A stretch of DNA of 64,000 bases, from the NCBI RefSeq assembly GCF_018350175.1, contig NC_058369.1:13578001-13642000 (forward strand), written 5' to 3'. Below the pieces are notes generated by a model, which was not told the DNA's origin, did not search any database, and worked only from the letters and a program-made list of their open reading frames with translations. This document shows, in pieces, positions 7,520 to 24,747 of this stretch. Position 1 is the first letter of the stretch. Every line of letters begins with the position of its first letter. This DNA is from Felis catus. Its lineage: Eukaryota. A program made the position numbers and the translations under genes.

Positions 7520-8263
<744 letters not shown>

Positions 8264-8368
8264 AGTCTGCCGCTACACTCGAGGTGCTGCCGTGGATAGT
8301 AGCGGCCGGTGGTTTCCACTGAGCTCGAGGAGCCGAAGCTGGGAAGCTCGGTTCTCCGTCCTGCTCGC
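8264..8368 (-). pseudogene. Stranded 5' part of ancestral CIST1 exon 2 (EQDGEPSFPASAPRAQWKPPAATIHGSTSSVAAD)
   Basis: Removing the LTR and one TSD joins ...GCA GAC T to CC AAC..., in frame with exon 2. It is preceded by a polypyrimidine tract ending in TG rather than AG (8370-8369). Confidence 0.65.
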
Positions 8369-8942
8369 CAAGAGCACGGAAAAAAAAAATAACACTGGAG
8401 GGAAAACTCACTGAGGGGGCAGGGAGGGGATGGTTAGGGACAAGGGGGTGTGGCCTCAGGCCCAGCCCCTCTCCGGAGGCCTCCCCGTTATCCCAGATGG
8501 TAAACACCTGCCTCTCGGGAGACCTGGAGGACTTGGCGAACCACGTGAGTGCTCCGTGGGAAGCGGGAGGCGCCCTTGTCTGAAGTTCTACAGCCAAAGT
8601 TACAGCCCGGGTGGGGCCCTCCCCGCCCCCACTCTTGCGTCGGGGCTCTGAAGGCCTCGGTATATAGGGAATGGCTGCAACCCANNNNNNNNNNNNNNNN
8701 NNNNNNNNNNNNNNNNNNNNNNNNNNNNNNNNNNNNNNNNNNNNNNNNNNNNNNNNNNNNNNNNNNNNNNNNNNNNNNNNNNNNNNNNNNNNNNNNNNNN
8801 NNNNNNNNNNNNNNNNNNNNNNNNNNNNNNNNNNNNNNNNNNNNNNNNNNNNNNNNNNNNNNNNNNNNNNNNNNNNNNNNNNNNNNNNNNNNNNNNNNNN
8901 NNNNNNNNNNNNNNNNNNNNNNNNNNNNNNNNNNNNNNNNNN

Positions 8943-9013
8943 TGTGGGGCTTGAAATCACCACCCTGAGACCAGGAGTCTCATGCTCCACCAACTGAGCC
9001 AGCCAGGCGACCC
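8943..9013 (-). mobile_element. Can-SINE 5' part (remainder in N gap)
   Basis: ggggcttgaaatcaccaccctgaga...actgagccagccaggcg. Confidence 0.75.
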
Positions 9014-9880
9014 TGGGGAACCCTTCTAAACCTTCTGGGACTCAGTTTCTTCCTCTGTAAAGTGTAAGTCGAGCCTCTGAGCGCTCACACAGATTTGGCA
9101 CATAGTGGGTGGTCAGGTGCACAGATCCACCTCCAAGCCCCCGGGGAGGATCAGCCCTAATCTTCTTCATCAGGTACCTGGAAGGTCCCCAAGGCTAAAC
9201 TCAGAGTCTTAAATGAGAGGTTGGTTCTGAGGTCTCTGGCTCTGGGAACAATCCGTGGTTTGGGGCTCTGGAAATTACCTTGCTCTGTTCCAGCCACTCC
9301 CTGGCTCCTACCCCATCCCAGGCACTGAGCCCAGGAGCTAGAATGAGGGTGGGGGAATATTTTGTGGGCCACGTCCCACAAGGACTTCCTAGTTCCAGGC
9401 TGCTAGGCACCTTAGCTGCTTGTGAGCTCGTTTATCAACGGCTCCTTGCCCCACCCTACCTACTCTGCCCCGGGCGAATCTTTGTGCTTCCTCCCTCACC
9501 TCACCTCCGGCAGCAAAAATGCGGAAATAACCTCAGGCGCCAAGAGGGGGCTGGGTCAACACGCACACCCCTAATTCTCTGTCCAGGCTCCCAGGCTCTG
9601 TGGGATGCCAGAGAAGTCTAGCAGAGGCATGGTGCACTGGCCTGACTTCATTCCCATTTTACAGATGGGGGACTAAGGCTCAGAATGGTTGGGAACCTGG
9701 CCCAAGGTGACTGGGAAGGTGGGAAGAGGGCCCCTTAAGGACCACCAAGGAGTCAAGGATGAAGAGGCCAGCCTCCCCAAACTGCTTCCTGTCATCATTT
9801 TTTAGGTATTTCTGCTGAAATGAAGATGACTCAGGGCCACAGTGGACCCCAAGCCAAGCCAGAACTCTGGGGAGCTGAAC

Positions 9881-10015
9881 TTTTTTTTTTTTTTAAGTAG
9901 GCTTCACATGCAGCAAAGAGCCCAAGGGGTGGGGGCGCGGGGGGAAGAGACGGGCTTGAACTCGTGACCCTTCAAGAGTCGGACCCTTAACTGACTAAGC
10001 CACCCAGGTGCCCCA
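9881..10015 (-). mobile_element. Short Can-SINE
   Basis: Poly-T followed by aagtaggcttcac...gccacccaggtgcccc. Confidence 0.8.
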
Positions 10016-10896
10016 AGGGAGCTGAACGTTTTAAAGTCAACCGAGGAAAACCAGTGCTTGAAAGAGGAGGTGGAGGACGACACAAGCTCTGCTGAGTGCC
10101 GGGGACAGAGTAGACAGGTGCTCCTGAGCTGCCGGAGAGCTGACCAGAAGGTGAAGTGAAATTGGATCCAGGCACTGTGCCGGGAGTTTGCTTTGCCCGG
10201 AGTGCCCTAGACCAGGAGGCTGGCAAGAGCCAAGGCATCTGGTTCTACTCTGGGCCTGGCACAGCTGGGAGACTCGCCTCGCCTGAGCCTCAGTTTCCTG
10301 AGCTCTGCAGGGGGGATACATGTGGTGCCTTCGGAGTGAAGCCCTTGCCCGCAGTGGGAATCCCGGGCGTGGTGGCCTCCGTTCTTGACGTTCTAGGGCT
10401 GAGGCCGGGGCATGGGTCAGAGAGAGCCATGACTCGGTGGGACAAGGAGGGCTGGGGGGGAGGGCTGCGGGTTCAACTCTTCTGCAGCCCGGGGACCGTC
10501 TTACAGGGCGGCAGAAGGAAATCAAGTCAGGCGCCAAGAACCTCTCCTGGGAGCCATCAATGCTTAGTGACCAGGAAGTGAGCCCTTACGTGCCCCCCAC
10601 TATGGCCCTGGGGCCCTCACTCCTCTCCCCTTGGGGGCTACAAGAAACTGAGGTTTGAAACAGAACCTCAAACTGGGTATGGAGGCCCCCACCAGCCTCT
10701 TGCTGGTTCAGATCATCAGCAGAGTGGCAGCGTCCCACTTTGCTTCTGAGAGGGGCGGCCCTTCACGTGGTGGGGGAAGGCTGGGGGGGGGGGGTGGTCT
10801 GAAGGAGGGATTCAGAAGCCAAGTGTGTTCCTGAGCCATACGCCCCCCCCCCCTCCAGCTTCCCCAAAGCCAGGCCTCCTTGTCACCTGTTCTTAC

Positions 10897-10987
10897 CTCT
10901 AGAGGCGACAGGGGCAAGGGAGGGATTCCCCAGCAGCAGCACCAGAGACAGCGGCAGAAGTGGCGAGGGCAGCTGGGAGCCCGCCAT
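10897..10987 (-). CDS. CIST1: Exon 1 of a small mucin-like single-pass membrane protein (probable CIST1/LOC729966 orthologue); encodes the signal peptide
   Basis: ATG at 10987; MAGSQLPSPLLPLSLVLLLGNPSLAPVASR has a hydrophobic signal-like core; donor AG|GTAAGA at 10896, phase 1. The symbol rests on position between PDE4C and IQCN (recalled synteny) and on protein architecture. Confidence 0.72.
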
Positions 10988-10989
10988 TC

Positions 10990-11350
10990 CAGGGCAGGGA
11001 GGGCGAAAGGCGGGCTCGGCACAGGTGTGTGGCACGCGCACGCGCACGCGCACGCGCCCCCTGCCTGCGGCGCGTGGGGCTGGGCACAGGTGGGGCAGAG
11101 GTGGGGCCTCCACCTGGACCCCCCCGCCTCTCCTACAAACCCCACCTGGACCATGACCCTGAAGCCGTCCAACTCTCCCTATCCCCTCAACTCTGCGGCC
11201 CCCTCCGTAGCGGCCCCAAATCCATGCTGTCCCCGCCCCGCCCCTCCTCTGTCCGGGCCGCCCCCCTCTGGGGCAGCCCCCTCACTCTCTCTCTCTGCCC
11301 GGTTCCTGCCCCAACAGCCTGGGTGGGTCTGTCTGGCTCGCTCTCTCACC
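10990..11350 (-). promoter_or_regulatory. CpG-rich 5' UTR/promoter region of CIST1
   Basis: CpG-dense; GC boxes near 11230-11265; (CACGCG)n run at 11033-11057 directly upstream of the ATG exon. Confidence 0.5.
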
Positions 11351-11409
11351 AAGACTGGGGGTGAGAGAGAAAGGCAGGCTACACTTCCCCAATCGGGAAG
11401 TGGCTGGAA

Positions 11410-11700
11410 ACTCCTAGCATTTCCTGAAGGGGGCACCCATGCATACGCCCGTAGGATTTTCTAGGGGCAGGGAACTCATGGTGGCCATTCTGGACCGGGT
11501 CCCCGGACACTGGCTTCTGGAATGTGCTGGGGACCGCTTCCATCTGGAACTGACTGGACTCCCCTCCATTAGCCACGGATAGACACGGTGACGTATGTGA
11601 GGCCACCCTGTCGGCCCTGACCTCTAGAAAAGATTTAGGGTCCCTCTCCCGGCTGCAGAACCCAGGTGCCGACTGCACGGTTGGAAGCTTTGGGGCCCCT
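11410..11700 (-). repeat. Diverged local duplicate of IQCN coding segment ~13115-13415
   Basis: Collinear exact blocks: ctagcatttcc (11414/13119), taggattttctag (11452/13157), atgtgaggccaccctg (11595/13297). Translations share RVASH, FQxEAVPxT, KPxSGDPxQ, RKSY and EML. Confidence 0.85.
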
Positions 11701-11806
11701 CCCATCCAAGATGTTCCAGAGCCTCTCAATTCCTCCCCCCCCACCCCAGCCACACCCAAGACACCCCCACGAGCACAGGTGGACCAAGACTCAGGCTGTG
11801 GAGGGC

Positions 11807-11812
11807 TTTATT
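11807..11812 (-). terminator. Polyadenylation signal of IQCN
   Basis: AATAAA on the minus strand about 60 nt after the IQCN stop codon. Confidence 0.7.
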
Positions 11813-11874
11813 CACTAGACCCTAAGAGCCACATTGCCCCTCTCCTGGTGTCCCCCCACCAGTCGGTCAATGTC

Positions 11875-14800
11875 CTAGACACCCGGCCACTGCATGTACT
11901 GCGGATCGTCCCATGCTGCTGGTCCCAAGAGCGCATCCGTGGTGAGGGTGGCCCGAGTGTGATGGCCGCGCCAGGTGGCTTGAAGCGTCTTGGCTGCCAC
12001 CTGCTTCTGCCTCAGCTGGCGGCGTGCGCTGAAGCCCCTCCACGCCGACTGGATGGTCGCGGCTGCCTCACTCTGGCGACGGGACTGCCGGGGGCTCCCG
12101 GGGATTGTCTGGGTGCCAGAGCCCCATGGGACGCCTGCCTGGACTCTGGCGCCCCGGCCCATGCCGTGCACCACCCGAGTAGGCAGGGTGTGGCCACACA
12201 TGTGGCACGTGCGGGGGCTGGAACCCACGAGCATCACCACACTGGGCGGGCTCCCCGCCCTGGGACTCAGGGACTGGCAGAGGGGGCAGACGTGCGGCTG
12301 GCAGGACTGGAAGCAGCGGTGGTCAGAGGTCCACCCGGTCCTGCCGCCCATCTCGGCCCACACCCCCTGGAGCAACGCTGGCGGGGTTTGGCCCCGGCGG
12401 ATACAGAAGCCCCGCCACACGGCCTGGATGACGGTGGCAGCTCTGGAGAGCCGGGCCAGGTCCCGCCGCACACGGTAGCCACGCCAGGCGGCCTGGATGA
12501 TGACGGCCCACTGGTGCCACGCTTTGATGGCGCGGCGTGCCAGGTAGCCACGTGTGCGCGCCTGGATAATGACCACAGCGCGGATGATTATCTTCTCCAC
12601 GACCTGCATCGATGCCATCAGCTTCCCCGGCTGCCTGGGATTCACCGCTGCCTCTCTGCCCACAGTGTCCCCCGGCACAGAAGCCCTGGCCGGCTCCCAC
12701 GGGCCACCAGGGGTCACTGCGCCGTCCACGGGCCCGACGGCTCCACTGGGGACGGCAGAGTTCCGCGCTTGGCCACCAGCTCTGACGGCGTCCGCGGGGC
12801 CCTGGAGTACAGCGGGAGTCAGGAGTGCCCTAGGACTATCTGTAGGAGCCACAGCGCTCTGGAAATCCCGAGACCCCCATGTTGGCTCCTGGATTAAAAG
12901 GGGCCTCCGGGAACCGCCAGGTGAAGACTCATAGCCCAGAGACACCCTCCGAAACTCTGGGTGCAGCCCAGGGATGCCCATGTCATGTGTCGCCTCAGTA
13001 CGCGTGATGGGTGTTATGGCTGGTGGCGTAGCCGGGAGGTGTTCGGGACTTTGCCGTGAGGACCTGTGGGCCTGCTCTCGCACGTCACGTGAGGGCACGA
13101 TCCTGGCTACCTTATCATCTAGCATTTCCGACACAAGACTACCAGGCACGGACCTATAGGATTTTCTAGAGCCAAGAAATTTGCGGCTGGTCTGAGCCGG
13201 ATCCCCAGACGCTGGCTTCTCGTGTGTTCTGGGGACAGCTTCTGTCTGGAACCCACCAGATGCCACCCCACTCACCCTGGGCGGATAAAGCGGCACATGT
13301 GAGGCCACCCTGGCGGCCCCTGACCTCTGGGAAGTCTTGGGGGTCCCCATCCCAGCTACCGACCCTGGGTGCAAACTGGATGTTATAGTGCTGCCATGGG
13401 CCAGCTTGGGTGACCCTGTGACTATGGTAGAAGCCCCCGCCTCGTGGGCGTGGCTCTGGGGCACGTGATCCACGAAGGGGTTCTGAGGCACAATGAGATC
13501 CACCGAGGGGCTCTGGGACCCATGAGCCGCTGTTGCCCGTTGATGAGCCAAAGGGGCCCCGGTAGCTCTGACAGACTCCATGTACACACTGGGGACCCTG
13601 CTAGTTGTCACAAAGTGGGAACTGGGGGCCCCCCAAGTGGTTGCTGACCCCTGCTGCAGAGCTGCAGTGACGCCACCTGCCCTCCAGTGCTTGGCAATAC
13701 TCAGGGCCTGGGGAGGGACAGGGGCCATGCCACTGGTCAGCGACTTGGTTTCACTGGGAACCACCTCCTCCAACAATGGCTTTTGACCGTTGGGAAGGAC
13801 CTGGAGGCTGTGGTTGATGTCAGTTGATGGGAGGCTATGGGGCATCCACGGGGTTTCCTCGAGGACTATGGACTCCCCACTGGATTCGGACGCCTGGGAC
13901 AGAGCCTTCTCCAGGTCCTCTGGCTTCATCATGACCTGGTCATCTGTGGTCTCAAATGGCATCATCCCAAGAGCGTGGCTCAACTGTGAGGCTCTTTGTA
14001 GAACCGTGGGCCTTTGGTGCACCCTCCAGGTTGTGCCACTAGCTTCCCCAGCCCGGGGATGAAGTTGAGCCAGGCCAATGGCACGGGATGCTTGGAAGGG
14101 GGCTATAGACCCTTCCCCAGCCAGGGATCCGTAGTAAGGACGGGGAGTGATCCTGATCAGCATGGACCCCTGGGGAAGGCTCTGGGCCACATTTCCGACT
14201 GTGGAGGGCAGGCCAGCTGCGCTAGCCCTGGACCCCAGAACCAGGCCCCCATTCAGTCCCCCAGCCATAGATGCTGGAACCATAATAGAGGCCACAGACT
14301 CAGGGGAGACATTTGGGGCCACCTCACTCGCCACTGAACCTGGGACAAGGCTCGGAGCAGTGAAACTAACTGCGCATCTTACAGGGAGGCTTTGCCTCAT
14401 CCCACCAGCCCCAGACGCTGCAATCAGACTGGGGGCCACAGAACCTGGACACAGGGTCCTGGTCATGCCACTGGCCACAGAACCCAGAGGAAAGCTCTGG
14501 GCCACAGCACTGGCCATGGGATCTGGAGGAAGACCCTGGCCCATGCCCCTGATCACGGATCCTGGGGGAAGGCTATGGCTGATACCATAGATCACAGACC
14601 CTGGGGGAAGGGTTTGAGCTACACCACTGACCACATAACCTGGTGGAAGGTGGGGAAGCACGTCACTGATCACGGGCCCCGGAGGCAGGCTTTGGCCCAC
14701 ACCTCTGATCACAGACCCAGGAGGAAGGCTGGGGGCCACACCACTGGCCACAGCACCTGGGGCCATAGCTGTGGCCATCCTATTGGCTACAGCACCTGGC

Positions 14801-17800
14801 ACCAGGCCATTGTCTGTGCCCATCACAGGCTCCTGGCTGACAGTGTTTGCTTGTTGGTAACCTGGTGCCACAATTGTGGACACAGAAGAATGCTGGTGGT
14901 TCAAAGGTGTTGGGAGATCGACATTGACCGGAGAAATATTGGGGGCCACGCTGGCCTGGGAAAACTTGAATGGACTCCTACCCTGTCTGTTGGGCACTGA
15001 AGCCCGGGAGAAACCAGGACCCGCCTCTGAGGCTTGTTCACGAACCAAAGGGACACCTGCCACAGAGCCCGGGGATGCAGTGGGGGTCCCACTGGCCACC
15101 TGAAACTGGTCTGGGCCCACACCAGTTACCGCACTTCTCTGGCACACACTCCCTGCGATGCCTGGACACACAGGTCCCGGACACACACTTAGGAACATAC
15201 CAGCAGCCAGGGTCCCCCGAGACATATTTGGGAACATGCCGGCAGCCATGGCACCTGGGGACATGCTGGTAGCCATGCCCCTGAACAGAGCCCCCGGAGA
15301 TATACCGGCTCCCTGGTCTAGACAAGAGTCCTCTCCACTAGCCACAGGCACCTGGTAGAGGTTTGGGGCTGAAACAGCAACAGCAGAATGTGCAGTCCTA
15401 CTTGGGCACCTCCCCCTGACACTGAATGGCTGATGACATTCAAGGGACACCTCACTGAACTCAGGGGCCTGGGGGTGTGAGGCCACCCCACTAACCATTA
15501 CAGGATCTTGACATGGGTCCACCCCAGGGGTCACAGATGGCTGGCTCAGACCTTGACCCATGCTGCTGGTCCCAGATGGATATGATGCACTCGGGGGGAC
15601 TTCAGTCACGACCGATGGATGACGCCGACTCGGGGCCACGGCATTCACCCTTGATGATGGTAGATTTGAACCCACTTTAGGGGGCCGACTTGACTGACCA
15701 ACTGCACAGCTCGTACCACTCATTACAGATGGTTGGAATAGGCTGAGGGGCTCCCTAGTAGCCACAGGTGCCTGGGCTAGGCTGGGGGCCACCCCACTGG
15801 TCACAGATGGCTGGGCTAGGCTGGGGGCCACCCCACCAGTCATAGGTAGCGGTGTTAGGCTGGGGACCACCCTACTGGTCACAGATGCCTGCATTAGGTT
15901 GGGGGCCATCCCACTGGTCACAGATGGCTGGGCTAGGCTGGAGGTCACCACACTGGTCACAGGTGGCTGGGCTAGGTTGAGGGCCACTCCACTGGTCACA
16001 GATGGCTGGGCTAAGCTGGGGACCATCACACTAGTCATAGATGGCTGGGCTAGGTTGGGGGCCACCCTACCAGTCACAGATGGCTGGGCTAGGCTGGAGG
16101 TCACCACACTGGTCACAGATGGCTGGGCTAGGCTGGGGGCCATCACACTAGTCATAGATGGCTGGGCTAGGTTGGGGGCCACCCTACCAGTCACAGATGG
16201 CTGGGTTAGGCTGGAGGTCACCACACTGGTCACAGGTGGCTGGGCTAGGCTGGGGGCCACCCCACCAGTCATAGGTAGCAGTGTTAGGCTGGGGGCCATT
16301 CTACCGGTCACAGATGCCTGCATTAGGTTGGGGGCCATCCCACTGGTCACAGATGGCCAGGCAAGGCTGGGGGCCATCCCACCAGTCACAGGTAGCTGTG
16401 TTAGGCTGGGGACCACCCTACTGGTCACAGATGCCTGCATTAGGTTGGGGGCCATCCCTCTGGTCACAGATGGCTGGGCTAGGCTGGAGGTCACCACACT
16501 GGTCACAGGTGGCTGGGCTAGGTTGGGGGCCACTCCACTGGTCACAGATGGCTGGGCTAGGCTGGGGGCCATCACACTAGTCATAGATGGCTGGGCTAGG
16601 TTCGAAGCCACCCTACCAGTCACAGATGGCTGGGCTAGGCTGGGGGTCACCACACTGGTCACAGGTGGCTGGGCTAGGCTGGGGGCCACCCCACTGGTCA
16701 TGGATGGCCGGGCTAGGCTGGGGGCTACCCCACTGGTCAAAGATGCCTGGGCTAGGTTGGGGGCCACCATACTAGTCACAGATGACCAGGATATGTTGGG
16801 GGCCACGGCACTAGTCATAGATGGCTGGGCTAGGTTGGGGGACACCCCACTGGTCACAGATGGCTGGGCTAGGCTGGGGGCCACCCCACTGATCACTGAT
16901 GCCTGGGCTAGATTTGGGGCCACTCCACTGGTCACGGATGGCTGGGCTAGGCTGGGGGCCATCACACTAGTCATAGATGGCTGGGCTAGGTTCGAAGCCA
17001 CCCTACCAGTCACAGATGGCTGGGCTAGGCTGGGGGTCACCACACTGGTCACAGGTGGCTGGGCTAGGCTGGGGGCCACCCCACTGGTCGTGGATGGCCG
17101 GGCTAGGCTGGGGGCTACCCCACTGGTCAAAGATGCCTGGGCTAGGTTGGGGGCCACCATACTAGTCACAGATGACCAGGATATGTTGGGGGCCACGGCA
17201 CTAGTCATAGATGGCTGGGCTAGGTTGGGGGACACCCCACTGGTCACAGATGGCTGGGCTAGGCTGGGGGCCACCCCACTGATCACTGATGCCTGGGCTA
17301 GATTTGGGGCCACTCCACTGGTCACGGATGGCTGGGCTAGTCTGGGGACCACCCTACCAGTCATAGATGGCTGGGCTAGGTTGGGGGCCATGGCACCAGT
17401 CACAGATGGTTGGGTTAGATTGGGAGCCACCCCACTGGTCACAGGTGGCTGGGCTAGGCTGGGGGCCACCCCACCAGTCACGGATGGCTGGGCTAGACTG
17501 GGGGCCACCCCACCGGTCATGGATGCCTGGGCTAGGTTGGGGGCCACCACACTAGTCAAAGATGGCCAGGCTAGGTTGGGGGCCACCACACTAGTCACAG
17601 ATGACTGGGCCAGGCTGGGGGCCACGACACTGATCACTGATGCCTGGGCTAAGTTGGGAGCTGTCCCACTAGTCACAGATAGCTGGGCTAGTATGGGGGC
17701 CACCCTACCAATCACAGATGGCTGGGCTAGTTCGGGGGCCACGGCACCAGTCACAGATGGTTGGGCTAGGTTGAGGGCCACCCCACTAGTAATAGATGGC

Positions 17801-20800
17801 TGGGCTAGGCTGGGGGCCACGTTACTGGTCACAGATGCCTGGGCTAAGTTGGAAGCTGTCCCACCAGTCACAGATGGCTGGGCTAGGCTGGGAGCCACCC
17901 CACTGGTCACAGATGCCTCGGATAGGCTGGGGGCCACCCCACCGGTCACAGACGGCTGAGCTAGGCTGGGGGCCACGCTACTGGTCACAGACGCCTGGGC
18001 TAAATTGGGAGCCACCCCACTGGTCCCAGATGGCTGGGCTAGGCTGGGGGCCACCTTACCAGTCACAGATGCCTGGTCTATGTTGGGGGCCACCCCACCT
18101 GTCACAGATGGCTGGGCTAGATTGGGAGTCACCCTACTGGCCACAGATGCCTGGTCCATGTTGGGGGCCACCCCACCTGTCACAGATGGCTGGGCTAGGC
18201 TGGGGGTGACCTTAGTAGTCATAGACGATTCAGATAGGCTGGGGGTGACCCTACTGACTTTAAATGGCTGTTGCGGGTTTGGAGCCATGTTATCTGCTAC
18301 TGATGGCAGGGAGAGGCTTGAGGTTAATCTACTGGCCCCAGAGGGCTGCTGATACACGGTAGGGGCCACATTACCCAAAGACACACTTCTGGTCAGTCCT
18401 GTTCTATAGGATTTCCGGGACAAGCTCTTCTTCAGATCCATGGAGCTTTGGCCTGAAGACACATCCCTCTCATCCGGATCATCTGAGCCCCAGTGGACAC
18501 TCAAGGTCACATGACCGGACACTGAGCTGTGGTGCAGAATGGGCATCGGCTCTGAACCCGCAGAGGGAGGGTGGTGGAGGTTTGGAGTCGTGTGTGGCCA
18601 GCTCACCTCCCTAGTTTCTTCCCTGTCTCCAGGCCCCTGAGGCCCCCCCTCGGCCTCTCCAGAGAGGAGGGCATCTACCCGGATGTCCCTATCCAAGCTG
18701 GCCTCCAAGGACTCCTCCTCCGCCAGGTCGATAGCAGTCAGACTGGTCACAGACATGGTGGAAAGGCTGAGTGAACTACAGCTGGGCAATGAGCTCTGGG
18801 AATTACTCACATTCGGGCCACAGTCTGTGGAGTCTGGGGACAGGCTTCCGGACAGGTCATTGTCCAGACCCTGTGGCAAACCGGCCACCAGTTCATTGAG
18901 TATACGGCCAGTCACTTGCTCCCGTGGGCAGTGCCCACGGGAAGTGGTACCCTCGGTCCGCTTCCTCTCCTGCCGAGGGATGGCTGTACCGGGCAGGGGG
19001 TGTGCCAACCTACTGCCTGGGGACGCTTGGAACACACTGGGATCTACCTGAGTCTTGAGTGCCCAGCGATGACCGGGAGCCGCGGAGCCAGGCAAGAGAC
19101 CTAGGCTTATGTCACAGGCCTCGGGAGTCTGTGGTTGGGCTAGGGGTGCTTTGCTCACAGTGGCAGCCCTCCGTGGACCTGAGGTCGCCTTGCCGATTCT
19201 CTCCCTAGGGTCCGGGGAGGCCCGTTTGTGATTTGAGGACTGAGTTTTCTGCACGGCGTCCTCACGGACCACAGATGGCTGTCGTGGAACTTTGGTAGCC
19301 GATGACCGGTATACGCCGGGGGGCACCTTGTTGACCCCGGAGGGCCGACACCAACAAACGGATCCCCCATAGGCAGCGACACACCGGTGGGAGTGGGAGG
19401 CCTTCCCGCCACCCACAGTGCGGGGAGGCATAGCCGGGGCCACCCTGCCCTCCCTCGACGAGGCCCACGGATGTGGGGCCACCCTGCTGACATGTGGCTT
19501 ATGGGAGCTCTGGGCTGTGCCACCGGCCACTGACGGCTGGCTGGTGCTTGGGCCCACACCGTTGACAATGAGCGGCTGCCACAGACGGGGGGGCAGCTGC
19601 AGGAGGGGTGGCCTGGGCAAATCGGGGCCCGTGTCGCTCTCCACGGGGTTGAGATCCGATGCCAATTCACCGGCCGCTGGGGGGAGGCACACAGTTTCCT
19701 CACTGACCTCAGGATTCAGATACAGGTTTGAGGAGGAGTCCCTGCTGGGCCCCCTCTCCCGTGATGGAGTGGGGTCCAGGGCAGCAATTAGGAGGTACTG
19801 ATGAACAGTGGTGATCACTCTACTAGTTAGGGAGGCACCCATGGAGACCACCGACGAGCAGGGTGACCCCCCGAGCATGGCCCCATCCCCCATCTCTGCT
19901 AAGAACCCAGCAGGCCTGCCTGTGAAGAAGCCCTCCCAGGCCCCATCCTGGGGAACCCTGACCTTGCTGGGCTGTGGTCTCACGAGGCCTAGGGTGGGCC
20001 CCCACGCAGCTGATGGGCTCCCCACCTCCACTGGGGTCGGCATCATAGTCATCCTGCTTCCTGCTGTTTGCGAGGTGGCCTTGGGGAGGACGACTCCGGT
20101 CCTCAGGGCTGCCTGAGACAAAGACTGGCTCAGGACCGCGCCTAGCTCCCCCTGACACAGGGCCTGGCTCAGCGCTGCCCACTCCTCCTCCGTCAGCGCC
20201 TTGCTGAGCACGCCCGCCAGTTTGCCCTGCTTGGCCTTAGCGAGTTTTGCCCGGAGCTCGGTGGGGGTCAGGGTGCAGGACAGGGCAATGCCCAGCTCAC
20301 CCCAGGATAGCACTTTCATCAGCGCTGTGCCCAGCATGCCCTGGGGCAGGGCCTTGGTCATCGTGGCACCCAGGACTTTCTTTGTCAGGGCCTGGTTCAG
20401 GGCTGCCCTCACTTGCCCCTGGGAGAGGGCTTTCGCCAGCAGGGCACGGAGGTCCTCCTGGGAGCCCAGCTCGGCGGCCAGCTCGGCACACAGGGAGGCG
20501 AGCTGGGAGGCTGCCAGCTCTTCCTGGCAGGGTGTGGCTGGGCCGGCCATCGACGGCTGGGCCCGGGTAGCTCCACTGTCACCCCAGGATTCAATGTTGC
20601 ACGTGGGGTGTCTGGCAGATGCCGACAGGGGCATCAGCATGCTCTGGGTCTCGGAGGACCCCTGGCATGGGCCCTGGGTGGCTTTGCCCTGTGCGTGGCT
20701 GTGGGGCTGGATCCGGGTCAGTCTGTCCTCTGGCTTGGCTCGGGGCAGAGTGCCAAGGGCACCAACGTGATGACAAGGCTGGGAGGAGGCCCTGAACCCA

Positions 20801-23322
20801 GCCAAGAGCGGCTGCGACCGGGTCTTGCTGCTGAGCTCAGCAGGTTGGTGGGTTCCATAGAGGCACTTGGCTGCTTCTGTGACCAGCTGGGCCTGGGAGT
20901 GCACCTTGGTCAGCCCGGTAGGCAGATGTGCTTGAGATTGGACCTTTACTGCTCCTGTGGCCAGATGTGCCTGGGACTGTGCTTTGGTCAGACATGTGCC
21001 CAGATGTGCAAAGGATGGGGTCTTGGTCAGCTTGGCAGATGGACGTGCCTGGGACAGGGCCTTGGACGGACATGGGCCCAGATGTGCCTGGGGCAGAGTC
21101 GCGGTCAATTCAGCAAGCAGCTGTCCCTGGGACGAGGCTGTGGTTGAACATGTGGCCAGCCGTTCCTGGGGCAGAGCTTTGGCCAGACATGTTCCCGCGG
21201 CCTTGGCCGGACGTGTGGCCGGCTCGCCCCGGGGTAGGACCACAGCTGTTTCTACAGGCACATACGCCTGGGATTGAACCTTCATGACATCGGTCCTCAG
21301 GTGTGTCTGTAATGAGGACTTGTTCCTGTCCTCAGTCACTTTTGCCCATGGCGAAGCCCTGGGCGTTTCAACGGCCAGACTGGTGTTGGATACTGTTTCC
21401 GTTTTCACCTGTTTCTGGGAGAAGGTCTTGAGTTTTTCAGCTTCTAAAGGAGGCCTGGCTGGAGCCTTGGGAGTCCCAGCCCCCAGATGTGGTGGGGGAA
21501 AGTATTTGACCTTTCCCTCAGGCAAGGATGAGTGGGATGAGATCTTGACCATCCCTGTTGTCTGCTTTGCATCCACCACAGCCTTGGCCTTTGGTCCGTT
21601 CAGATACGTGGGGGATGAGGTGTTGGGAACTCCGGCTGCTGCTGCCGCTGGAGGTGAAGACTTCAAATTTCCAGCTGTTGGAGGTGGCAGGCACAGGGTC
21701 CTGATGATGGCAGCCACCGAGCGGAATTGGGCTGGGGTTTTGGTGACCATGGCCGCCAGACGGGTCTGGGGAGGTGTCTTGGCCACCGCCGGCACCGGGC
21801 ATGTCTGGGGCGGAGTCTTGGTCATTGCGGCCACAGGGCGCGTCTGGGTTGGGGGCTTGATCATTGAGGCTAACAGGCATATCTGTGGTGAGATCTTGGC
21901 CATCATGGCTGCCGGTCGTGTCTGGGGTGAAGGGTTGGTTATCGAGGCTGTCGCTCGCATCTGGCTTGGGGTCTTGGATACCGGGGCTGCTGGGGATGGC
22001 TGGGGTGGGGTCTTGTTCACCATGGCTGCCAAGCAAGACTGTAATGGAGTCTTGGTCACTGTGGCTGGCTGGAATGTCTGGGGTGAAGTCTTAGCCACTG
22101 CAGCCACCGGGCATGTCTGGGGTGAGGCCTTGGCCACCGGGCCTACCTGGTACATCTGGGGTGGGGTCTTGGTTATTGTTGCCGTGGGCGTCGAGCATGG
22201 CTGGGGTGGGGTCTTGTTCATCATGGCTGCCAGGCAAGACTGGAGTGGGGTCTTGGTCATCGCGGCTGCTGGGTACATCGGGGTTGGGGTCTTGGTCATC
22301 CGGGCCGCTGGGTACATCTGGGGTGGGGCCTTGGCTACTGTTCCCGTGGGCACTACACACGGCTGGGGCGGGGTCTTGGTTATCACAGGTGCTGGGCCTG
22401 TCTGGGGTGGGGCTTTGAAGACCTCTGCTTCCATGTGGTCCTGGGTCTGGGTCTTGAGTGATCCGTGAACTGCCGGGGCAGACCTGACAGGTGGTGGTGG
22501 CCCGGAGGCTCCTGACTTGCTGGCTCTGGCAGTTCCTTGCTTGGTCTTCACTGTGTCCCCTTCTACATGGACAAGGCAGGAATTTCTGACGGTTCTTGTC
22601 AGCAGGCATGGGCGGCACTTTGCATCTAGGCTCACTGGACATGGAAGTCTGATGGCCACGGTCTGGTGTGGTAGGAAGGTGACGTTGGGGCCTCCAATGG
22701 TACAAGGGACCCGTATGCCCGGCTGTGGAGTACTCTGGGTCTGCAGGAGGACCAGCTGGTGGGTGCAGGCAGCCAGGCTGTCGGAGGAAGGGAACTGGGT
22801 CTCTTTGCTCACCATGATGGGCTGAGCCAGAGGGGACTTGCTCTCTCCTGGATGCTGGAACCGCACCTGCTGGGGGGGGTGGTAAGGGATGTCCCCCTCC
22901 TCCACGCTCACTTTTTTCTCCACCGACTTGCCAGACCGGAGGAGACGCTTGGTGTTGAAGTGTCGCCAGGCCTCCTGGATGGCCTTGGCTGCCGTCATCT
23001 GGGAGATCAGCTTTTGCCGGAGCCGGTAGCCTCTCCAGTTGGCTTGGATGAGGGTGGCTGCACGGGACAGCATCATGTCCATCTCATCTACCAGGATGTT
23101 CTTGAAGGCCTGGCTCTCAACCACAGCCCGGAGGCGTGGGATGTGATGAGTCGCCTTCTTGTCCTTGTCCAGATCTTGCGGAAGGCTCTCCTTGGAACCA
23201 AGTGGCTCATGCTGAGGTTTTGGACGCAGTGTCCGTGCTTTGTCTTGGAGATTGGGGTCGGACTGGGGCTGGTACAAGCTCTGCCCATTGGGTGATAACT
23301 GGGGCTGCGTTGCTTGCTGCAT
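11875..23322 (-). CDS. IQCN: IQ motif containing N (KIAA1683), main ORF: 3815 aa from ATG 23322 if unspliced, 1428 aa if 12802-19962 is spliced out
   Basis: Contains PRLRAVVESQAFKNILVDEMDMM..AATLIQANWRGY and C-terminal IQ motifs (IQARTRGYLARR, IQAAWRGYRVRR, IQAVWRGF, IQSAWRGF, LQATWRGHHTR), matching recalled human KIAA1683. Exon acceptor cttcacAG| at 23354-23353; TAG at 11877-11875. The start codon is uncertain (see frameshift finding). Confidence 0.92.
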   Translation of the reverse strand: MQQATQPQLSPNGQSLYQPQSDPNLQDKARTLRPKPQHEPLGSKESLPQDLDKDKKATHHIPRLRAVVESQAFKNILVDEMDMMLSRAATLIQANWRGYRLRQKLISQMTAAKAIQEAWRHFNTKRLLRSGKSVEKKVSVEEGDIPYHPPQQVRFQHPGESKSPLAQPIMVSKETQFPSSDSLAACTHQLVLLQTQSTPQPGIRVPCTIGGPNVTFLPHQTVAIRLPCPVSLDAKCRPCLLTRTVRNSCLVHVEGDTVKTKQGTARASKSGASGPPPPVRSAPAVHGSLKTQTQDHMEAEVFKAPPQTGPAPVITKTPPQPCVVPTGTVAKAPPQMYPAARMTKTPTPMYPAAAMTKTPLQSCLAAMMNKTPPQPCSTPTATITKTPPQMYQVGPVAKASPQTCPVAAVAKTSPQTFQPATVTKTPLQSCLAAMVNKTPPQPSPAAPVSKTPSQMRATASITNPSPQTRPAAMMAKISPQICLLASMIKPPTQTRPVAAMTKTPPQTCPVPAVAKTPPQTRLAAMVTKTPAQFRSVAAIIRTLCLPPPTAGNLKSSPPAAAAAGVPNTSSPTYLNGPKAKAVVDAKQTTGMVKISSHSSLPEGKVKYFPPPHLGAGTPKAPARPPLEAEKLKTFSQKQVKTETVSNTSLAVETPRASPWAKVTEDRNKSSLQTHLRTDVMKVQSQAYVPVETAVVLPRGEPATRPAKAAGTCLAKALPQERLATCSTTASSQGQLLAELTATLPQAHLGPCPSKALSQARPSAKLTKTPSFAHLGTCLTKAQSQAHLATGAVKVQSQAHLPTGLTKVHSQAQLVTEAAKCLYGTHQPAELSSKTRSQPLLAGFRASSQPCHHVGALGTLPRAKPEDRLTRIQPHSHAQGKATQGPCQGSSETQSMLMPLSASARHPTCNIESWGDSGATRAQPSMAGPATPCQEELAASQLASLCAELAAELGSQEDLRALLAKALSQGQVRAALNQALTKKVLGATMTKALPQGMLGTALMKVLSWGELGIALSCTLTPTELRAKLAKAKQGKLAGVLSKALTEEEWAALSQALCQGELGAVLSQSLSQAALRTGVVLPKATSQTAGSRMTMMPTPVEVGSPSAAWGPTLGLVRPQPSKVRVPQDGAWEGFFTGRPAGFLAEMGDGAMLGGSPCSSVVSMGASLTSRVITTVHQYLLIAALDPTPSRERGPSRDSSSNLYLNPEVSEETVCLPPAAGELASDLNPVESDTGPDLPRPPLLQLPPRLWQPLIVNGVGPSTSQPSVAGGTAQSSHKPHVSRVAPHPWASSREGRVAPAMPPRTVGGGKASHSHRCVAAYGGSVCWCRPSGVNKVPPGVYRSSATKVPRQPSVVREDAVQKTQSSNHKRASPDPRERIGKATSGPRRAATVSKAPLAQPQTPEACDISLGLLPGSAAPGHRWALKTQVDPSVFQASPGSRLAHPLPGTAIPRQERKRTEGTTSRGHCPREQVTGRILNELVAGLPQGLDNDLSGSLSPDSTDCGPNVSNSQSSLPSCSSLSLSTMSVTSLTAIDLAEEESLEASLDRDIRVDALLSGEAEGGPQGPGDREETREVSWPHTTPNLHHPPSAGSEPMPILHHSSVSGHVTLSVHWGSDDPDERDVSSGQSSMDLKKSLSRKSYRTGLTRSVSLGNVAPTVYQQPSGASRLTSSLSLPSVADNMAPNPQQPFKVSRVTPSLSESSMTTKVTPSLAQPSVTGGVAPNMDQASVASRVTPNLAQPSVTGGVAPNIDQASVTGKVAPSLAQPSGTSGVAPNLAQASVTSSVAPSLAQPSVTGGVAPSLSEASVTSGVAPSLAQPSVTGGTASNLAQASVTSNVAPSLAQPSITSGVALNLAQPSVTGAVAPELAQPSVIGRVAPILAQLSVTSGTAPNLAQASVISVVAPSLAQSSVTSVVAPNLAWPSLTSVVAPNLAQASMTGGVAPSLAQPSVTGGVAPSLAQPPVTSGVAPNLTQPSVTGAMAPNLAQPSMTGRVVPRLAQPSVTSGVAPNLAQASVISGVAPSLAQPSVTSGVSPNLAQPSMTSAVAPNISWSSVTSMVAPNLAQASLTSGVAPSLARPSTTSGVAPSLAQPPVTSVVTPSLAQPSVTGRVASNLAQPSMTSVMAPSLAQPSVTSGVAPNLAQASVISGVAPSLAQPSVTSGVSPNLAQPSMTSAVAPNISWSSVTSMVAPNLAQASLTSGVAPSLARPSMTSGVAPSLAQPPVTSVVTPSLAQPSVTGRVASNLAQPSMTSVMAPSLAQPSVTSGVAPNLAQPPVTSVVTSSLAQPSVTRGMAPNLMQASVTSRVVPSLTQLPVTGGMAPSLAWPSVTSGMAPNLMQASVTGRMAPSLTLLPMTGGVAPSLAQPPVTSVVTSSLTQPSVTGRVAPNLAQPSMTSVMAPSLAQPSVTSVVTSSLAQPSVTGRVAPNLAQPSMTSVMVPSLAQPSVTSGVALNLAQPPVTSVVTSSLAQPSVTSGMAPNLMQASVTSRVVPSLTPLPMTGGVAPSLAQPSVTSGVAPSLAQAPVATREPLSLFQPSVMSGTSCAVGQSSRPPKVGSNLPSSRVNAVAPSRRHPSVVTEVPPSASYPSGTSSMGQGLSQPSVTPGVDPCQDPVMVSGVASHPQAPEFSEVSLECHQPFSVRGRCPSRTAHSAVAVSAPNLYQVPVASGEDSCLDQGAGISPGALFRGMATSMSPGAMAAGMFPNMSRGTLAAGMFLSVCPGPVCPGIAGSVCQRSAVTGVGPDQFQVASGTPTASPGSVAGVPLVREQASEAGPGFSRASVPNRQGRSPFKFSQASVAPNISPVNVDLPTPLNHQHSSVSTIVAPGYQQANTVSQEPVMGTDNGLVPGAVANRMATAMAPGAVASGVAPSLPPGSVIRGVGQSLPPGPVISDVLPHLPPGYVVSGVAQTLPPGSVIYGISHSLPPGSVIRGMGQGLPPDPMASAVAQSFPLGSVASGMTRTLCPGSVAPSLIAASGAGGMRQSLPVRCAVSFTAPSLVPGSVASEVAPNVSPESVASIMVPASMAGGLNGGLVLGSRASAAGLPSTVGNVAQSLPQGSMLIRITPRPYYGSLAGEGSIAPFQASRAIGLAQLHPRAGEASGTTWRVHQRPTVLQRASQLSHALGMMPFETTDDQVMMKPEDLEKALSQASESSGESIVLEETPWMPHSLPSTDINHSLQVLPNGQKPLLEEVVPSETKSLTSGMAPVPPQALSIAKHWRAGGVTAALQQGSATTWGAPSSHFVTTSRVPSVYMESVRATGAPLAHQRATAAHGSQSPSVDLIVPQNPFVDHVPQSHAHEAGASTIVTGSPKLAHGSTITSSLHPGSVAGMGTPKTSQRSGAARVASHVPLYPPRVSGVASGGFQTEAVPRTHEKPASGDPAQTSRKFLGSRKSYRSVPGSLVSEMLDDKVARIVPSRDVREQAHRSSRQSPEHLPATPPAITPITRTEATHDMGIPGLHPEFRRVSLGYESSPGGSRRPLLIQEPTWGSRDFQSAVAPTDSPRALLTPAVLQGPADAVRAGGQARNSAVPSGAVGPVDGAVTPGGPWEPARASVPGDTVGREAAVNPRQPGKLMASMQVVEKIIIRAVVIIQARTRGYLARRAIKAWHQWAVIIQAAWRGYRVRRDLARLSRAATVIQAVWRGFCIRRGQTPPALLQGVWAEMGGRTGWTSDHRCFQSCQPHVCPLCQSLSPRAGSPPSVVMLVGSSPRTCHMCGHTLPTRVVHGMGRGARVQAGVPWGSGTQTIPGSPRQSRRQSEAAATIQSAWRGFSARRQLRQKQVAAKTLQATWRGHHTRATLTTDALLGPAAWDDPQYMQWPGV
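12802..19962 (-). other. IQCN: Stop-free, in-frame GT-AG segment (exitron or retained intron) within IQCN
   Basis: Donor AAG|GTCAGG at 19962, acceptor gtactccAG|GGC at 12803-12802; 7161 nt = 2387 codons, phase 0, no stop. Confidence 0.7.
15760..18260 (-). repeat. Coding minisatellite, 39-nt unit encoding 13 aa (~TSGVAPSLAQPSV), roughly 60-65 copies
   Basis: Plus-strand unit ~ccactggtcacagatggctgggctaggctgggggccacc repeated in tandem with substitutions while the reading frame is kept. Confidence 0.95.
21700..22420 (-). repeat. Degenerate 13-aa coding repeat (KTPPQxxPxAxxT) in IQCN
   Basis: About 17 units, e.g. KAPPQMYPAARMT, KTPLQSCLAAMMN, KTPPQTCPVPAVA. Confidence 0.85.
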
Positions 23323-23824
23323 TGTCTTTCTTCTTGAGCAGGTCAGCTCTGCCTGTGAAGGGTGGCAAGGAGGTAGGTGGTCAGGGAGTGGGGTCAGGCA
23401 GGCAAGAGGTCTCCTTGCTGCAGCAAGCACTCCAGGACCTACCTCTTCCTGTTCTTGGCGCCTCACGATCTTCCTCCTCTCCTTTGCAAGCCCTCTTTCT
23501 CCTGGCCACCTACCGCGGTGGCCTTTGGTACCTATGTCTCCCTCATCATCCTGTGGCCACTTCAATGCTGGCACAGTGCACCCGCTCGGTTAAATGTCCA
23601 ACCACCTTCTTGCTTTTTGAACTTCCTTTATATCTGGAACATAGTGTGAATATAGCACTGATCACACTATTTTGGAAAATTTCTGGGGTGTGTGTGTGTG
23701 TGTGTGTGTTATTTTTTGCCTCTCCCCATTTACTATGAATTCCTAGAAGGCTAGAACCAAGTCTGAGTCATTTCTGAGTCCCCATCTCGGTCACAGGGCC
23801 TGGTTTCAGGCTGCGAGCAGGTGA

Positions 23825-24300
23825 GTGTTGGGTGGGTGGCTACATTAATAAATGAGTGGTTGAGTGGACTGGAAGTTGGGCAGATAGGTGGACGAATGAC
23901 TAGATACGGAAGGGATAAATCTGGATAAATGAATGGCGAGTGGGTTGGAAAGATGGATAAAGGGTTGTGTGGAAGAATAAATCGGTAAATGAAATTGATG
24001 AATGAATTGATCAACAGATCAACAAATAAGGAAATGGACACATGGATGGATGGATGGATGGATGGATGGATGGGAGGGGAGAGAGAAGGAGGGAGGAATG
24101 GACGGATGGGTAGATGAATGAGTAGTGGATGGATGAAATCTGAGTAGATAAATGGGCGTATGAATGAAGAGAACTGAAGGAATTGAAGAGATCAATGAAC
24201 GGGAGGTAGACTGATGGCTGGATGGATCAGAGAATAGATGGTGGGTGAGTCATAGATGATGGGTAGATCAATGACAGATGGAAGGATGAGTAGAAGGACG
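23825..24300. repeat. Degenerate (TGGA)n simple repeat in the IQCN intron
   Basis: tggatggatgga runs. Related tracts at 26060-26130 and (TCCA)n at 42215-42300. Confidence 0.85.
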
Positions 24301-24470
24301 AGGGGGTGACTGCGGTTTTCAGAAGTACCTTGGTTCAGAGGGAGTTGGGATATTGCCAAGCAGCCCTGATGCGTAACCTGGAGCACAATACACTTGTCTG
24401 GCAGAAGCCCCCTCACATCCCTGCCATCTGGTGGGAGCAGCCAGATTTCTTTTCCCAGCCATCTACATAC

Positions 24471-24483
24471 CTTGAAGGGCCAT
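24471..24483 (-). CDS. IQCN: IQCN start-codon exon (ATG GCC CTT CAA G = MALQG)
   Basis: Donor AAG|GTATGT at 24470. Splicing to 23352 gives MALQGRADL...PVITQWA..PAP, resembling recalled human MTLQGRADL...PVVTQWA..PAP. Confidence 0.75.
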
Positions 24484-24747
24484 AGAGTTGGCGAAGGAGC
24501 AGGAGGAGAAGGTGCAATCTCAGAAGCCAACTTGTAAGAGGAAGCAGCCTTCATTCAGCCCTTCATCTCATGCAACGTGCAGCAACACTGCCCTGGGCTG
24601 GCTCTGACCTCAAGACCAACATGAGAAGAAATGTTAAAAAGCAGACAAACAAAATCCCCAAACCCTAGCATCTCAAAACAAAAATCAAAGACTTTTCATT
24701 CCACAAAGATGAATGTACAGAGAAGTTCATTCTAGTGTTATTCGGGG

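What the first reader, a model, noticed from the sequence alone, without database searches (positions are those of the whole stretch)
12802..19962. A 7.2-kb IQCN 'intron' is one uninterrupted in-frame ORF: exitron switch to a ~3800-aa isoform
Seen: donor AAG|GTCAGG (19962) and acceptor CAG|GGC (12802) bound 7161 nt = 2387 codons at phase 0 with no stop, and about 4.6 kb of this lies outside the 39-nt array. I saw no SINEs in it, although neighbouring introns are full of them. Recalled knowledge: the annotated human KIAA1683/IQCN protein (~1.2-1.4 k aa, calmodulin-binding, spermatid manchette) resumes at GPADA..., exactly this acceptor, and lacks this segment. Inference: the segment is under coding constraint, so the gene can make a ~1428-aa spliced form or a ~3815-aa form with a large Pro/Ser/Thr/Val spacer between its N- and C-terminal IQ clusters. 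Long models may already be annotated in some mammals; I cannot check this.
Basis: partly seen in the sequence, partly recalled or inferred. Interest (0 to 1): 0.85.

Follow-up and report, generated by a model that had tools for sequence, protein, structure and literature searches.

The report
Giant coding exon of cat IQCN
The 7.2-kb "intron" is the middle of an 11.5-kb protein-coding exon of the cat sperm gene IQCN that can also be spliced out in frame; both the ~3,850-residue and ~1,470-residue proteins are already in the public cat annotation, so it is real but not new.

Summary
Observation confirmed. Window 12802-19962 (minus strand) is 2387 codons with no stop, inside a 3899-codon ORF (23574..11875). 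The other five frames have 38-193 stops. The interval is bounded by AAG|GTCAGG and CAG|GGC.

The window is Felis catus IQCN. RefSeq already lists:
- the unspliced form: X1, 3853 aa, plus a 3815-aa internal-ATG form;
- an intermediate form: X3, 1850 aa, donor after 18811.

Long models of 2.4-4.0 kaa exist in carnivores, ungulates, mole, squirrels, tamandua, tenrec, mouse lemur and marsupials.

The non-repeat parts of the interval are about as conserved as the flanking coding sequence. They hold invariant Trp/Cys/Gly residues and conserved peptide islands. The two junction motifs (SK|VR and LTPxVLQ|GP) fall in the 99th percentile of conservation. This fits an old, coding, alternatively spliced "exitron" that encodes a disordered Pro/Ser/Thr/Val spacer.

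Isoform expression therefore rests on annotation only.

Verdict: real, correctly read, already annotated. It is absent from the IQCN literature I could search.

The parts
24471..24554 (-). Upstream coding exon with the ATG (28 codons, MKAASS...LWPFK), donor AAG|GT at 24471|24470
   Evidence: translation; identical to the first 28 residues of RefSeq isoforms X1/X3/X4; donor seen
23353..24470 (-). Ordinary intron between the upstream exon and the giant exon (acceptor ...CTTCACAG|GCAGAG)
   Evidence: X1 residue 29 maps to 23352
11875..23352 (-). Giant coding exon of IQCN (3825 codons plus stop at 11877-11875); read unspliced it gives isoform X1 (3853 aa) and, from the ATG at 23322, the 3815-aa protein
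   Evidence: IQ motifs (PF00612) at both ends
12802..19962 (-). Its removal gives isoform X4 (1466 aa)
12802..18810 (-). Nested exitron using an alternative donor (AAT|GTGAGT) and the same acceptor, 6009 nt in frame. It gives cat isoform X3 (1850 aa) and, at the same site, jaguar X2
12802..19047 (-). Candidate third donor (CAG|GTAGAT), 6246 nt in frame. It is homologous to the donor of jaguar isoform X3 and is not annotated in cat among the proteins seen
20113..22146 (-). Second internal in-frame spliced region (CAG|GTAGGC ... CTCAG|GC, 2034 nt), used in the 750-aa Felis catus UniProt model A0ABI8ASS4
15725..18206 (-). Tandem array of about 63 units of 39 nt (13 residues, consensus VAPSLAQPSVTSG), no indels
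18207..19962 (-). 5' non-repeat part of the interval (585 codons). Conserved islands (NGVGPSTS, PHVSRVAP, TLSVHWGS, VSNSQSSL); no Pfam family; AlphaFold mean pLDDT 32
12802..15724 (-). 3' non-repeat part of the interval (974 codons). Conserved islands include RRVSLGYE (12951-12928); a CTGAC branch-point-like motif and a pyrimidine tract lie inside the conserved LTPAVLQ codons just before the acceptor
11807..11812 (-). AATAAA polyadenylation signal 65 nt after the stop codon

Best explanation
The interval is the central 62% of the single 11.5-kb coding exon of domestic-cat IQCN (KIAA1683), a testis/sperm calmodulin-binding IQ-motif protein. Read through, it encodes a roughly 2,400-residue low-complexity segment rich in Pro, Ser, Thr, Val, Ala and Gly. 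That segment consists of 585 unique residues, about 63 copies of a 13-residue repeat, and 974 unique residues, and it lies between the N-terminal and C-terminal IQ clusters. It is predicted to be disordered. The same interval carries functional GT/AG signals inside conserved codons: K|V-R at the donor, and L-T-P-x-V-L-Q|G-P at the acceptor with its branch-point/pyrimidine tract. It can therefore be removed in frame as an 'exitron'. At least three nested donors (19962, 18810, probably 19047) join one acceptor (12802), giving proteins of about 3,850, 1,850 and 1,466 residues. Shown here: ORF integrity, splice motifs, cross-species conservation, and exact identity with deposited cat isoforms. Inferred: that both classes of mRNA are made in cat testis, that the long form is translated, and that the segment acts as a flexible spacer or scaffold.
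For: ORF and stop statistics. Canonical sites. The window's own deposited protein is 3815 aa, and long IQCN models occur in 40+ entries across mammals. Felis catus RefSeq X1 (3853 aa), X3 (1850 aa) and X4 (1466 aa) map residue for residue onto the window with junctions 19963|12801 and 18811|12801. The same junction separates short and long isoforms in five other species, and jaguar has two further donors. The same ...SK|GPxDA junction is found in short models of 21 of 24 species checked, across about ten orders. Region-wise identity of the interval is close to that of the flanking exon (for example fur seal 72/68% against 74/74%; pig 61/54% against 62/68%). Both junction windows are in the 99th percentile of conservation, and conserved islands exist. 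V1 and R2 of the interval, plus W, C and G residues, are invariant in 18 species. There are no dispersed repeats in 8-24 kb. There is no Pfam domain and pLDDT is 32. A bull sperm SWATH-MS table lists the 3340-aa bovine model A0A3Q1MGG8 at 342 kDa: PMC12128097.
Against: No run holding the interval is on record as RNA. RefSeq XP_ models are computational, so short models in some species could be projected from primate or rodent proteins, and long ones could be ORF extensions. The donor AAG|GTCAGG has C at +3, which makes it weak. Repeat units show pN/pS of about 0.96, so there is no residue-level constraint inside the array. Several long models are flagged LOW QUALITY. Dog long models start at an internal Met 24 residues after the donor rather than joining the N-terminal part. 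The bull proteomics entry gives no peptides. No long models were seen for bats, muroid rodents or anthropoid primates.
Confidence: 0.8

Rival explanations
1. Constitutive giant exon: in cat the 11.5-kb exon is always read through, and the short models (X4 and the like) are artefacts of projecting primate or rodent protein structures onto the genome.
For: The donor is weak (C at +3). No read evidence was obtained. Many short models come from assemblies with little testis RNA-seq, and some are LOW QUALITY.
Against: Cat X3 and jaguar X2/X3 use donors with no counterpart in the primate or rodent short proteins seen here, so they are unlikely to be homology projections. The K|VR and LTPxVLQ|GP motifs are in the 99th percentile of conservation in an otherwise fast-evolving region, as expected if the splice signals are used. 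The macaque Swiss-Prot entry IQCN_MACFA uses the same acceptor; that it derives from cDNA is my recollection, not checked here.
Confidence: 0.12
2. True intron that is merely retained or detained: the short form is the only protein, and the long ORF is an untranslated by-product kept open by GC-richness and the repeat array.
For: The human and mouse literature describes only a form of about 1,180 aa with four exons. The array shows no residue-level constraint. GC is 61%.
Against: There are 0 stops where about 48 are expected in 4.7 kb of non-repeat sequence. The ORF is open in dozens of species separated by up to about 160 My, including marsupials. Identity equals that of the flanking coding sequence. 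W, C and G residues are invariant and peptide islands are conserved. No transposon insertions are present.
Confidence: 0.04
3. Two proteins rather than one long one: transcripts that keep the interval are translated mainly from an internal start (the Met at cat residue 1228, window about 19893). This would give an 'interval + C-terminal IQ' protein separate from the N-terminal part, as the dog models suggest.
For: All dog, dingo and wolf long isoforms (about 2,600 aa) begin at the Met homologous to cat residue 1228 and share only the last 308 residues with the 1575-aa dog isoform. Gray whale and porpoise annotations also split the locus.
Against: In cat, and in most other species with long models, the frame is continuous from the N-terminal part through the donor. 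Split models may reflect assembly errors or a lineage-specific lesion in dog.
Confidence: 0.04

Closest known systems
Exitrons (exonic introns; Marquez et al. 2015, Genome Research; cited from my own knowledge)
   Same: It lies wholly inside a protein-coding exon, has GT..AG ends, a length divisible by three and no in-frame stop. Its GC content is like that of the surrounding exon sequence (0.61 against 0.61). It encodes a low-complexity, apparently disordered region, and splicing removes an internal protein segment without a frameshift.
   Different: Its size of 6.0-7.2 kb compares with typically about 100-300 nt for described exitrons. Several nested donors share one acceptor. It contains a 2.5-kb tandem array. 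Conservation extends across therian mammals.
Human/mouse IQCN (KIAA1683) as described in the infertility literature (PMC9728048: 4 exons, 1,180 aa, six IQ motifs, manchette)
   Same: It is the same gene, by named orthologues. IQ motifs sit at the N- and C-terminal ends. The exon junction is that of the cat short isoform X4.
   Different: The literature form lacks the 2,387-residue segment. In cat and many other mammals the annotated principal product is 2.6 times longer.
RefSeq/Ensembl long IQCN models in other mammals (for example cheetah XP_053075599.1 3633 aa, ermine X11 3977 aa, pig A0A8D1V6Q1 3805 aa, mouse lemur XP_075857457.1 3495 aa)
   Same: They have the same architecture: N-terminal IQ part, unique region, 13-residue repeat array, unique region, C-terminal IQ part. 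They are colinear over the whole interval.
   Different: Array length and sequence vary strongly (33-65% identity). Some lineages have only short or split models.

Membership tests
Exitron (alternatively spliced internal part of a coding exon) | Lies entirely within an annotated protein-coding exon | tested here: met
   RefSeq X1 reads 23352..11878 as one block. The interval 12802-19962 is internal to it.
Exitron (alternatively spliced internal part of a coding exon) | Canonical splice signals at both ends | tested here: met
   AAG|GTCAGG and ...CTCCAG|G, with CTGAC and a pyrimidine tract upstream of the acceptor. The alternative donors GTGAGT and GTAGAT are also canonical.
Exitron (alternatively spliced internal part of a coding exon) | Length divisible by three and no in-frame stop, so both forms are coding | tested here: met
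   Lengths of 7161, 6246 and 6009 nt are all divisible by three, and there are no stops in the frame.
Exitron (alternatively spliced internal part of a coding exon) | Both spliced and unspliced mRNAs exist in the same organism | tested here: inconclusive
Exitron (alternatively spliced internal part of a coding exon) | The retained form is translated | not testable with these tools
   Only indirect evidence: a bull sperm SWATH-MS table lists the 342-kDa long bovine accession without peptides.
IQCN / KIAA1683 orthologue | IQ calmodulin-binding motifs (PF00612) at the N- and C-terminal ends | tested here: met
   C-terminal 308 residues: four IQ stretches, E = 5e-23. N-terminal part: one IQ above the cut-off.
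IQCN / KIAA1683 orthologue | Best matches are proteins named IQCN, colinear over the full length | tested here: met
   The window gives exact residue matches to Felis catus XP_044904279.1, XP_044904297.1 and XP_011289052.4.
Ordinary spliceosomal intron | No sustained reading frame, free accumulation of transposons and indels, and conservation below the flanking exons | tested here: not met
   There are 0 stops against about 48 expected. There are no dispersed repeats. Identity is about equal to that of the flanking exon.

The most novel reading that the evidence does not exclude
The 6-7 kb coding exitron of IQCN is an ancestral therian feature whose splice signals are fixed inside invariant codons. 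On this reading the roughly 3,500-4,000-residue protein is the main functional product in most mammals. The short ~1,200-1,500-residue protein studied in human and mouse would then be one isoform, or the remnant after loss of the segment in anthropoids and muroids. Current models of IQCN function in the manchette and acroplaxome would describe only part of the protein.
Probability: 0.45. Interest if true: 0.55.

Novelty: already known. Interest (0 to 1): 0.3.

Why it matters
IQCN is a male-fertility gene: its loss causes fertilisation failure and manchette defects (PMC9728048). Papers describe it as a four-exon gene encoding 1,180 aa. Databases, but none of the papers I could find, show that in cat and many other mammals the same locus encodes a protein about three times larger, and that the 'intron' of the short form is conserved coding sequence. 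This bears on variant interpretation in animals, since an 'intronic' variant may be coding. It also bears on antibody and knock-out design and on how a large disordered spacer between calmodulin-binding clusters works. It is also an unusually large example of an in-frame, optionally spliced coding region. As a scan result it is a correct reading of something already annotated.

Tried and rejected
1. RNA reads. The look-up of sequencing runs found 20 holders of 12802-15700, none on record as RNA. The 14 'RNA?' rows are guesses and could be exome or DNA, so I draw no conclusion from them. After that, no letters of 23070-23141 were sent to any search tool; later references stop at 23067.
The other DNA collections hold no mammalian genomes. 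I did not use the metagenome scan, to avoid pulling in human contamination. Protein-level conservation was used instead.
3. Internal test on the array. Codon-position diversity and pN/pS among 51 distinct 39-nt units gave about 0.96 in the ORF frame, against 0.66 and 1.12 in the rotated frames. The array therefore gives no residue-level sign of selection and does not help either way.
4. Pfam. Nothing real was found in the interval. The Internalin_N line on the array has no passing stretch and is a low-complexity artefact.
5. AlphaFold on the 585-residue 5' part with 18 orthologues gave pLDDT 32. This fits disorder, though the alignment is shallow.
6. Proteomics. The bull paper gives the accession only and its supplement holds nothing. 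The boar phosphosites are on an accession I could not map.
7. Literature. No paper holds both IQCN and exitron. The review and the main IQCN papers do not mention a long isoform.
8. The joined (spliced) protein was never built or searched.
9. Logan/ENA clusters that look human or hominid (P0110, P0170) were not fetched or compared. N runs were left alone.
Full report
**Observation**

The minus strand of the window carries one ORF from 23574 to 11875, 3899 codons long. The other five frames hold 38-193 stops.

The tandem array (period 39/78/117 nt) covers 15725-18206. The remaining 4.68 kb is unique sequence. It has no stops where composition-matched shuffles give about 48, and where the two other minus-strand frames have 23-41 each.

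The boundaries read CCCAGCAAG|GTCAGG and ...CTGACTCCCGCTGTACTCCAG|GGCCCC. A self-comparison of the window shows a dispersed repeat family with up to 18 copies in the flanking bins, but none anywhere in 8001-24000.

**What it is**

A protein search with the 3' unique part of the interval returned the window's own deposited protein of 3815 aa. It also returned 44 other long proteins named IQ domain-containing protein N, of 2.2-4.0 kaa. These include cheetah at 96% identity, jaguar at 93%, canids, seals, mustelids, camel, rhinoceros, pig, equids, ruminants, mole, marmots and ground squirrels, tamandua, tenrec and mouse lemur. Marsupial IQCN models of 2440-2519 aa also read through the donor position into a repeat-rich middle.

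Cluster look-ups name the species and the isoforms. Felis catus RefSeq lists X1 of 3853 aa (XP_044904279.1), X3 of 1850 aa (XP_044904297.1) and X4 of 1466 aa (XP_011289052.4), all on the same 169-Mb record as the window's protein.

Exact block mapping onto the window gives the following:
- X1 is a 28-residue upstream exon plus 23352..11878 unspliced.
- The 3815-aa form starts at the ATG at 23322.
- X3 is 23352..18811 joined to 12801..11878.

All these junctions are GT..AG, and all removed pieces are multiples of three. The first short model I checked, tiger X1, has the same ...RPQPSK|GPADAV junction.

**Is the interval coding?**

I therefore used proteins.

Region by region, the unique parts of the interval are about as conserved as the flanking coding parts. 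Identities are listed in the order N-terminal part / 5' unique / 3' unique / C-terminal part:
- cat against fur seal: 74 / 72 / 68 / 74%
- cat against pig: 62 / 61 / 54 / 68%
- cat against mole: 60 / 48 / 44 / 66%

An alignment of 18 species shows invariant residues in the 5' unique part (W9, C35, W128, C203, C205, W491 and several Gly). Sliding windows show conserved islands such as RRVSLGYE (0.95), NGVGPSTS, PHVSRVAP, TLSVHWGS and VSNSQSSL.

From general knowledge of neutral rates, an ORF of more than 1,500 unique codons could not stay open in this many independent lineages without selection. This is an inference, not a computed result.

The array is different. Among 51 distinct units, pN/pS is about 0.96 in the reading frame. 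There, only frame and composition appear to be kept.

No Pfam family matches the interval. AlphaFold with the 18-species alignment gives mean pLDDT 32 for the 5' part. Pro, Ser, Thr, Val, Ala and Gly together make up 56-74% of the residues. The segment is best read as a long disordered spacer carrying short conserved motifs. That RRVS resembles a basic-directed kinase site is my own reading and was not tested.

**Is it also spliced?**

Read evidence failed. No run that holds the interval is on record as RNA. Three indirect lines remain.

1. Within jaguar, Geoffroy's cat, horse, mouse lemur and ground squirrel, the short and long deposited isoforms differ by the same SK|VR ... VLQ|GP junction. 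Jaguar has two extra donors, GPN|VSNSQS (the same as cat X3) and KTQ|VDPSVF. The homologue of the latter in cat is CAG|GTAGAT, with its last exon base at 19048. These felid-specific donors are not what homology projection from primates would produce.
2. The ...SK|GPxDA junction recurs in short models from about ten orders (21 of 24 species checked). The macaque Swiss-Prot entry uses the same acceptor with yet another donor.
3. The residues that encode the signals are exceptionally conserved. K|V-R (AAG|GTN AGR-type) is invariant in all aligned long models. L-T-P-x-V-L-Q|G-P, which in cat spells CTGAC plus a pyrimidine tract plus CAG|G, is nearly invariant. Both 8-residue windows are in the 99th percentile of the interval.

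This pattern is expected if the sites are used. It could also reflect protein constraint.

**Mechanism proposed**

One 11.5-kb exon is either kept whole or has 6.0-7.2 kb removed in frame, from one of several donors to a single acceptor. Kept whole, it gives an IQ / spacer / IQ protein of about 3,850 aa. Spliced, the two IQ clusters come together and the product is about 1,470-1,850 aa. The intermediate forms keep the most conserved block of the 5' unique part and drop the array and the 3' part.

The steps shown here are the sequence features, the conservation and the identity with deposited isoforms. The steps inferred are isoform expression, translation of the long form and the spacer function. 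A bull sperm SWATH-MS study lists the 3340-aa bovine model (342 kDa) as quantified, but gives no peptides.

**Rivals**

- A constitutive giant exon with artefactual short models is disfavoured by the felid-specific donors and the junction conservation (0.12).
- A true intron with an accidental ORF is excluded for practical purposes by the cross-species data (0.04).
- Internal-start products are suggested by the dog models, which begin at the Met homologous to cat residue 1228. This may occur in some lineages but is not needed in cat, where the frame is continuous (0.04).

**Comparison with what is known**

The interval meets the structural definition of an exitron: it is inside a coding exon, has GT..AG ends, is divisible by three and has no stop. 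The expression criteria could not be tested here. It is far larger than typical exitrons, which is stated from my own knowledge.

The gene is IQCN by IQ motifs and by named orthologues. The literature I could search treats IQCN as a four-exon, 1,180-aa protein (PMC9728048). No paper holds both IQCN and exitron, and neither that paper nor the 2026 review of IQ-motif genes mentions a long isoform.

No long models appeared for bats, muroid rodents or anthropoid primates. However, a gibbon 'uncharacterized protein' of 385 aa is a 38%-identical homologue of the last roughly 430 residues of the interval, with the islands kept. At least part of the frame therefore survives in apes. Human sequence was not examined.

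- N runs were left untouched.
- No human contig was fetched, and hominid-looking Logan/ENA clusters were not followed.
- After, no letters of 23070-23141 were sent to a search tool.

**Verdict**

The feature is already annotated in this genome and many others. Novelty: already known. Interest 0.3.

The open and more interesting question is whether the long protein is the main functional form, and whether it was lost in the lineages where IQCN has been studied.

Noticed in passing
window 24471-24554 (-), 23352: The RefSeq start codon lies in a small upstream exon (28 codons). This exon is spliced in phase 0 to the giant exon at 23352, so the start is joined to the main ORF by splicing.
   Followed up: partly
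window about 19893 (cat ORF residue 1228, MGDGAML): All dog, dingo and wolf long IQCN isoforms (about 2,600 aa) begin at the Met homologous to this residue, 24 codons after the donor. They share only the C-terminal 308 residues with the 1575-aa dog isoform. This points to a lesion or an internal start in canids.
   Followed up: partly
window 15725-18206: The 63 repeat units (51 distinct) have no indels. Nucleotide diversity is highest at first codon positions and pN/pS is about 0.96, so the array evolves without residue-level constraint. Dog and ermine 'isoforms' differ by multiples of 13 residues inside their arrays, which may be alignment or haplotype artefacts.
   Followed up: partly
window 15899-17959 (+), 11779-12897 (+), 21284-22468 (+): Long plus-strand ORFs (686, 372 and 394 aa) lie opposite the IQCN exon. 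The 686-aa ORF lies opposite the tandem array. All three are probably by-products of the repeat and GC-rich coding sequence.
   Followed up: no
window 12928-12951 (-): RRVSLGYE is the most conserved island of the interval (0.95 over 16 species), about 130-150 nt upstream of the acceptor. It contains an RRxS motif and is retained even in the gibbon fragment LOC129459588.
   Followed up: partly
related proteins P0183, P0176, P0321: In siamang, finless porpoise and gray whale, pieces of the interval are annotated as separate 'uncharacterized' genes inside or beside IQCN. This suggests the frame is partly kept in lineages that have only short IQCN models.
   Followed up: partly
literature, PMC3276122: The cattle IQCN (KIAA1683) locus is duplicated and varies in copy number, and one variant's copy number is associated with a fertility QTL. 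That study used a six-exon short model.
   Followed up: no
window 8001-12000: The 4 kb downstream of the IQCN stop is also free of the dispersed repeat family. None of this was examined.
   Followed up: no
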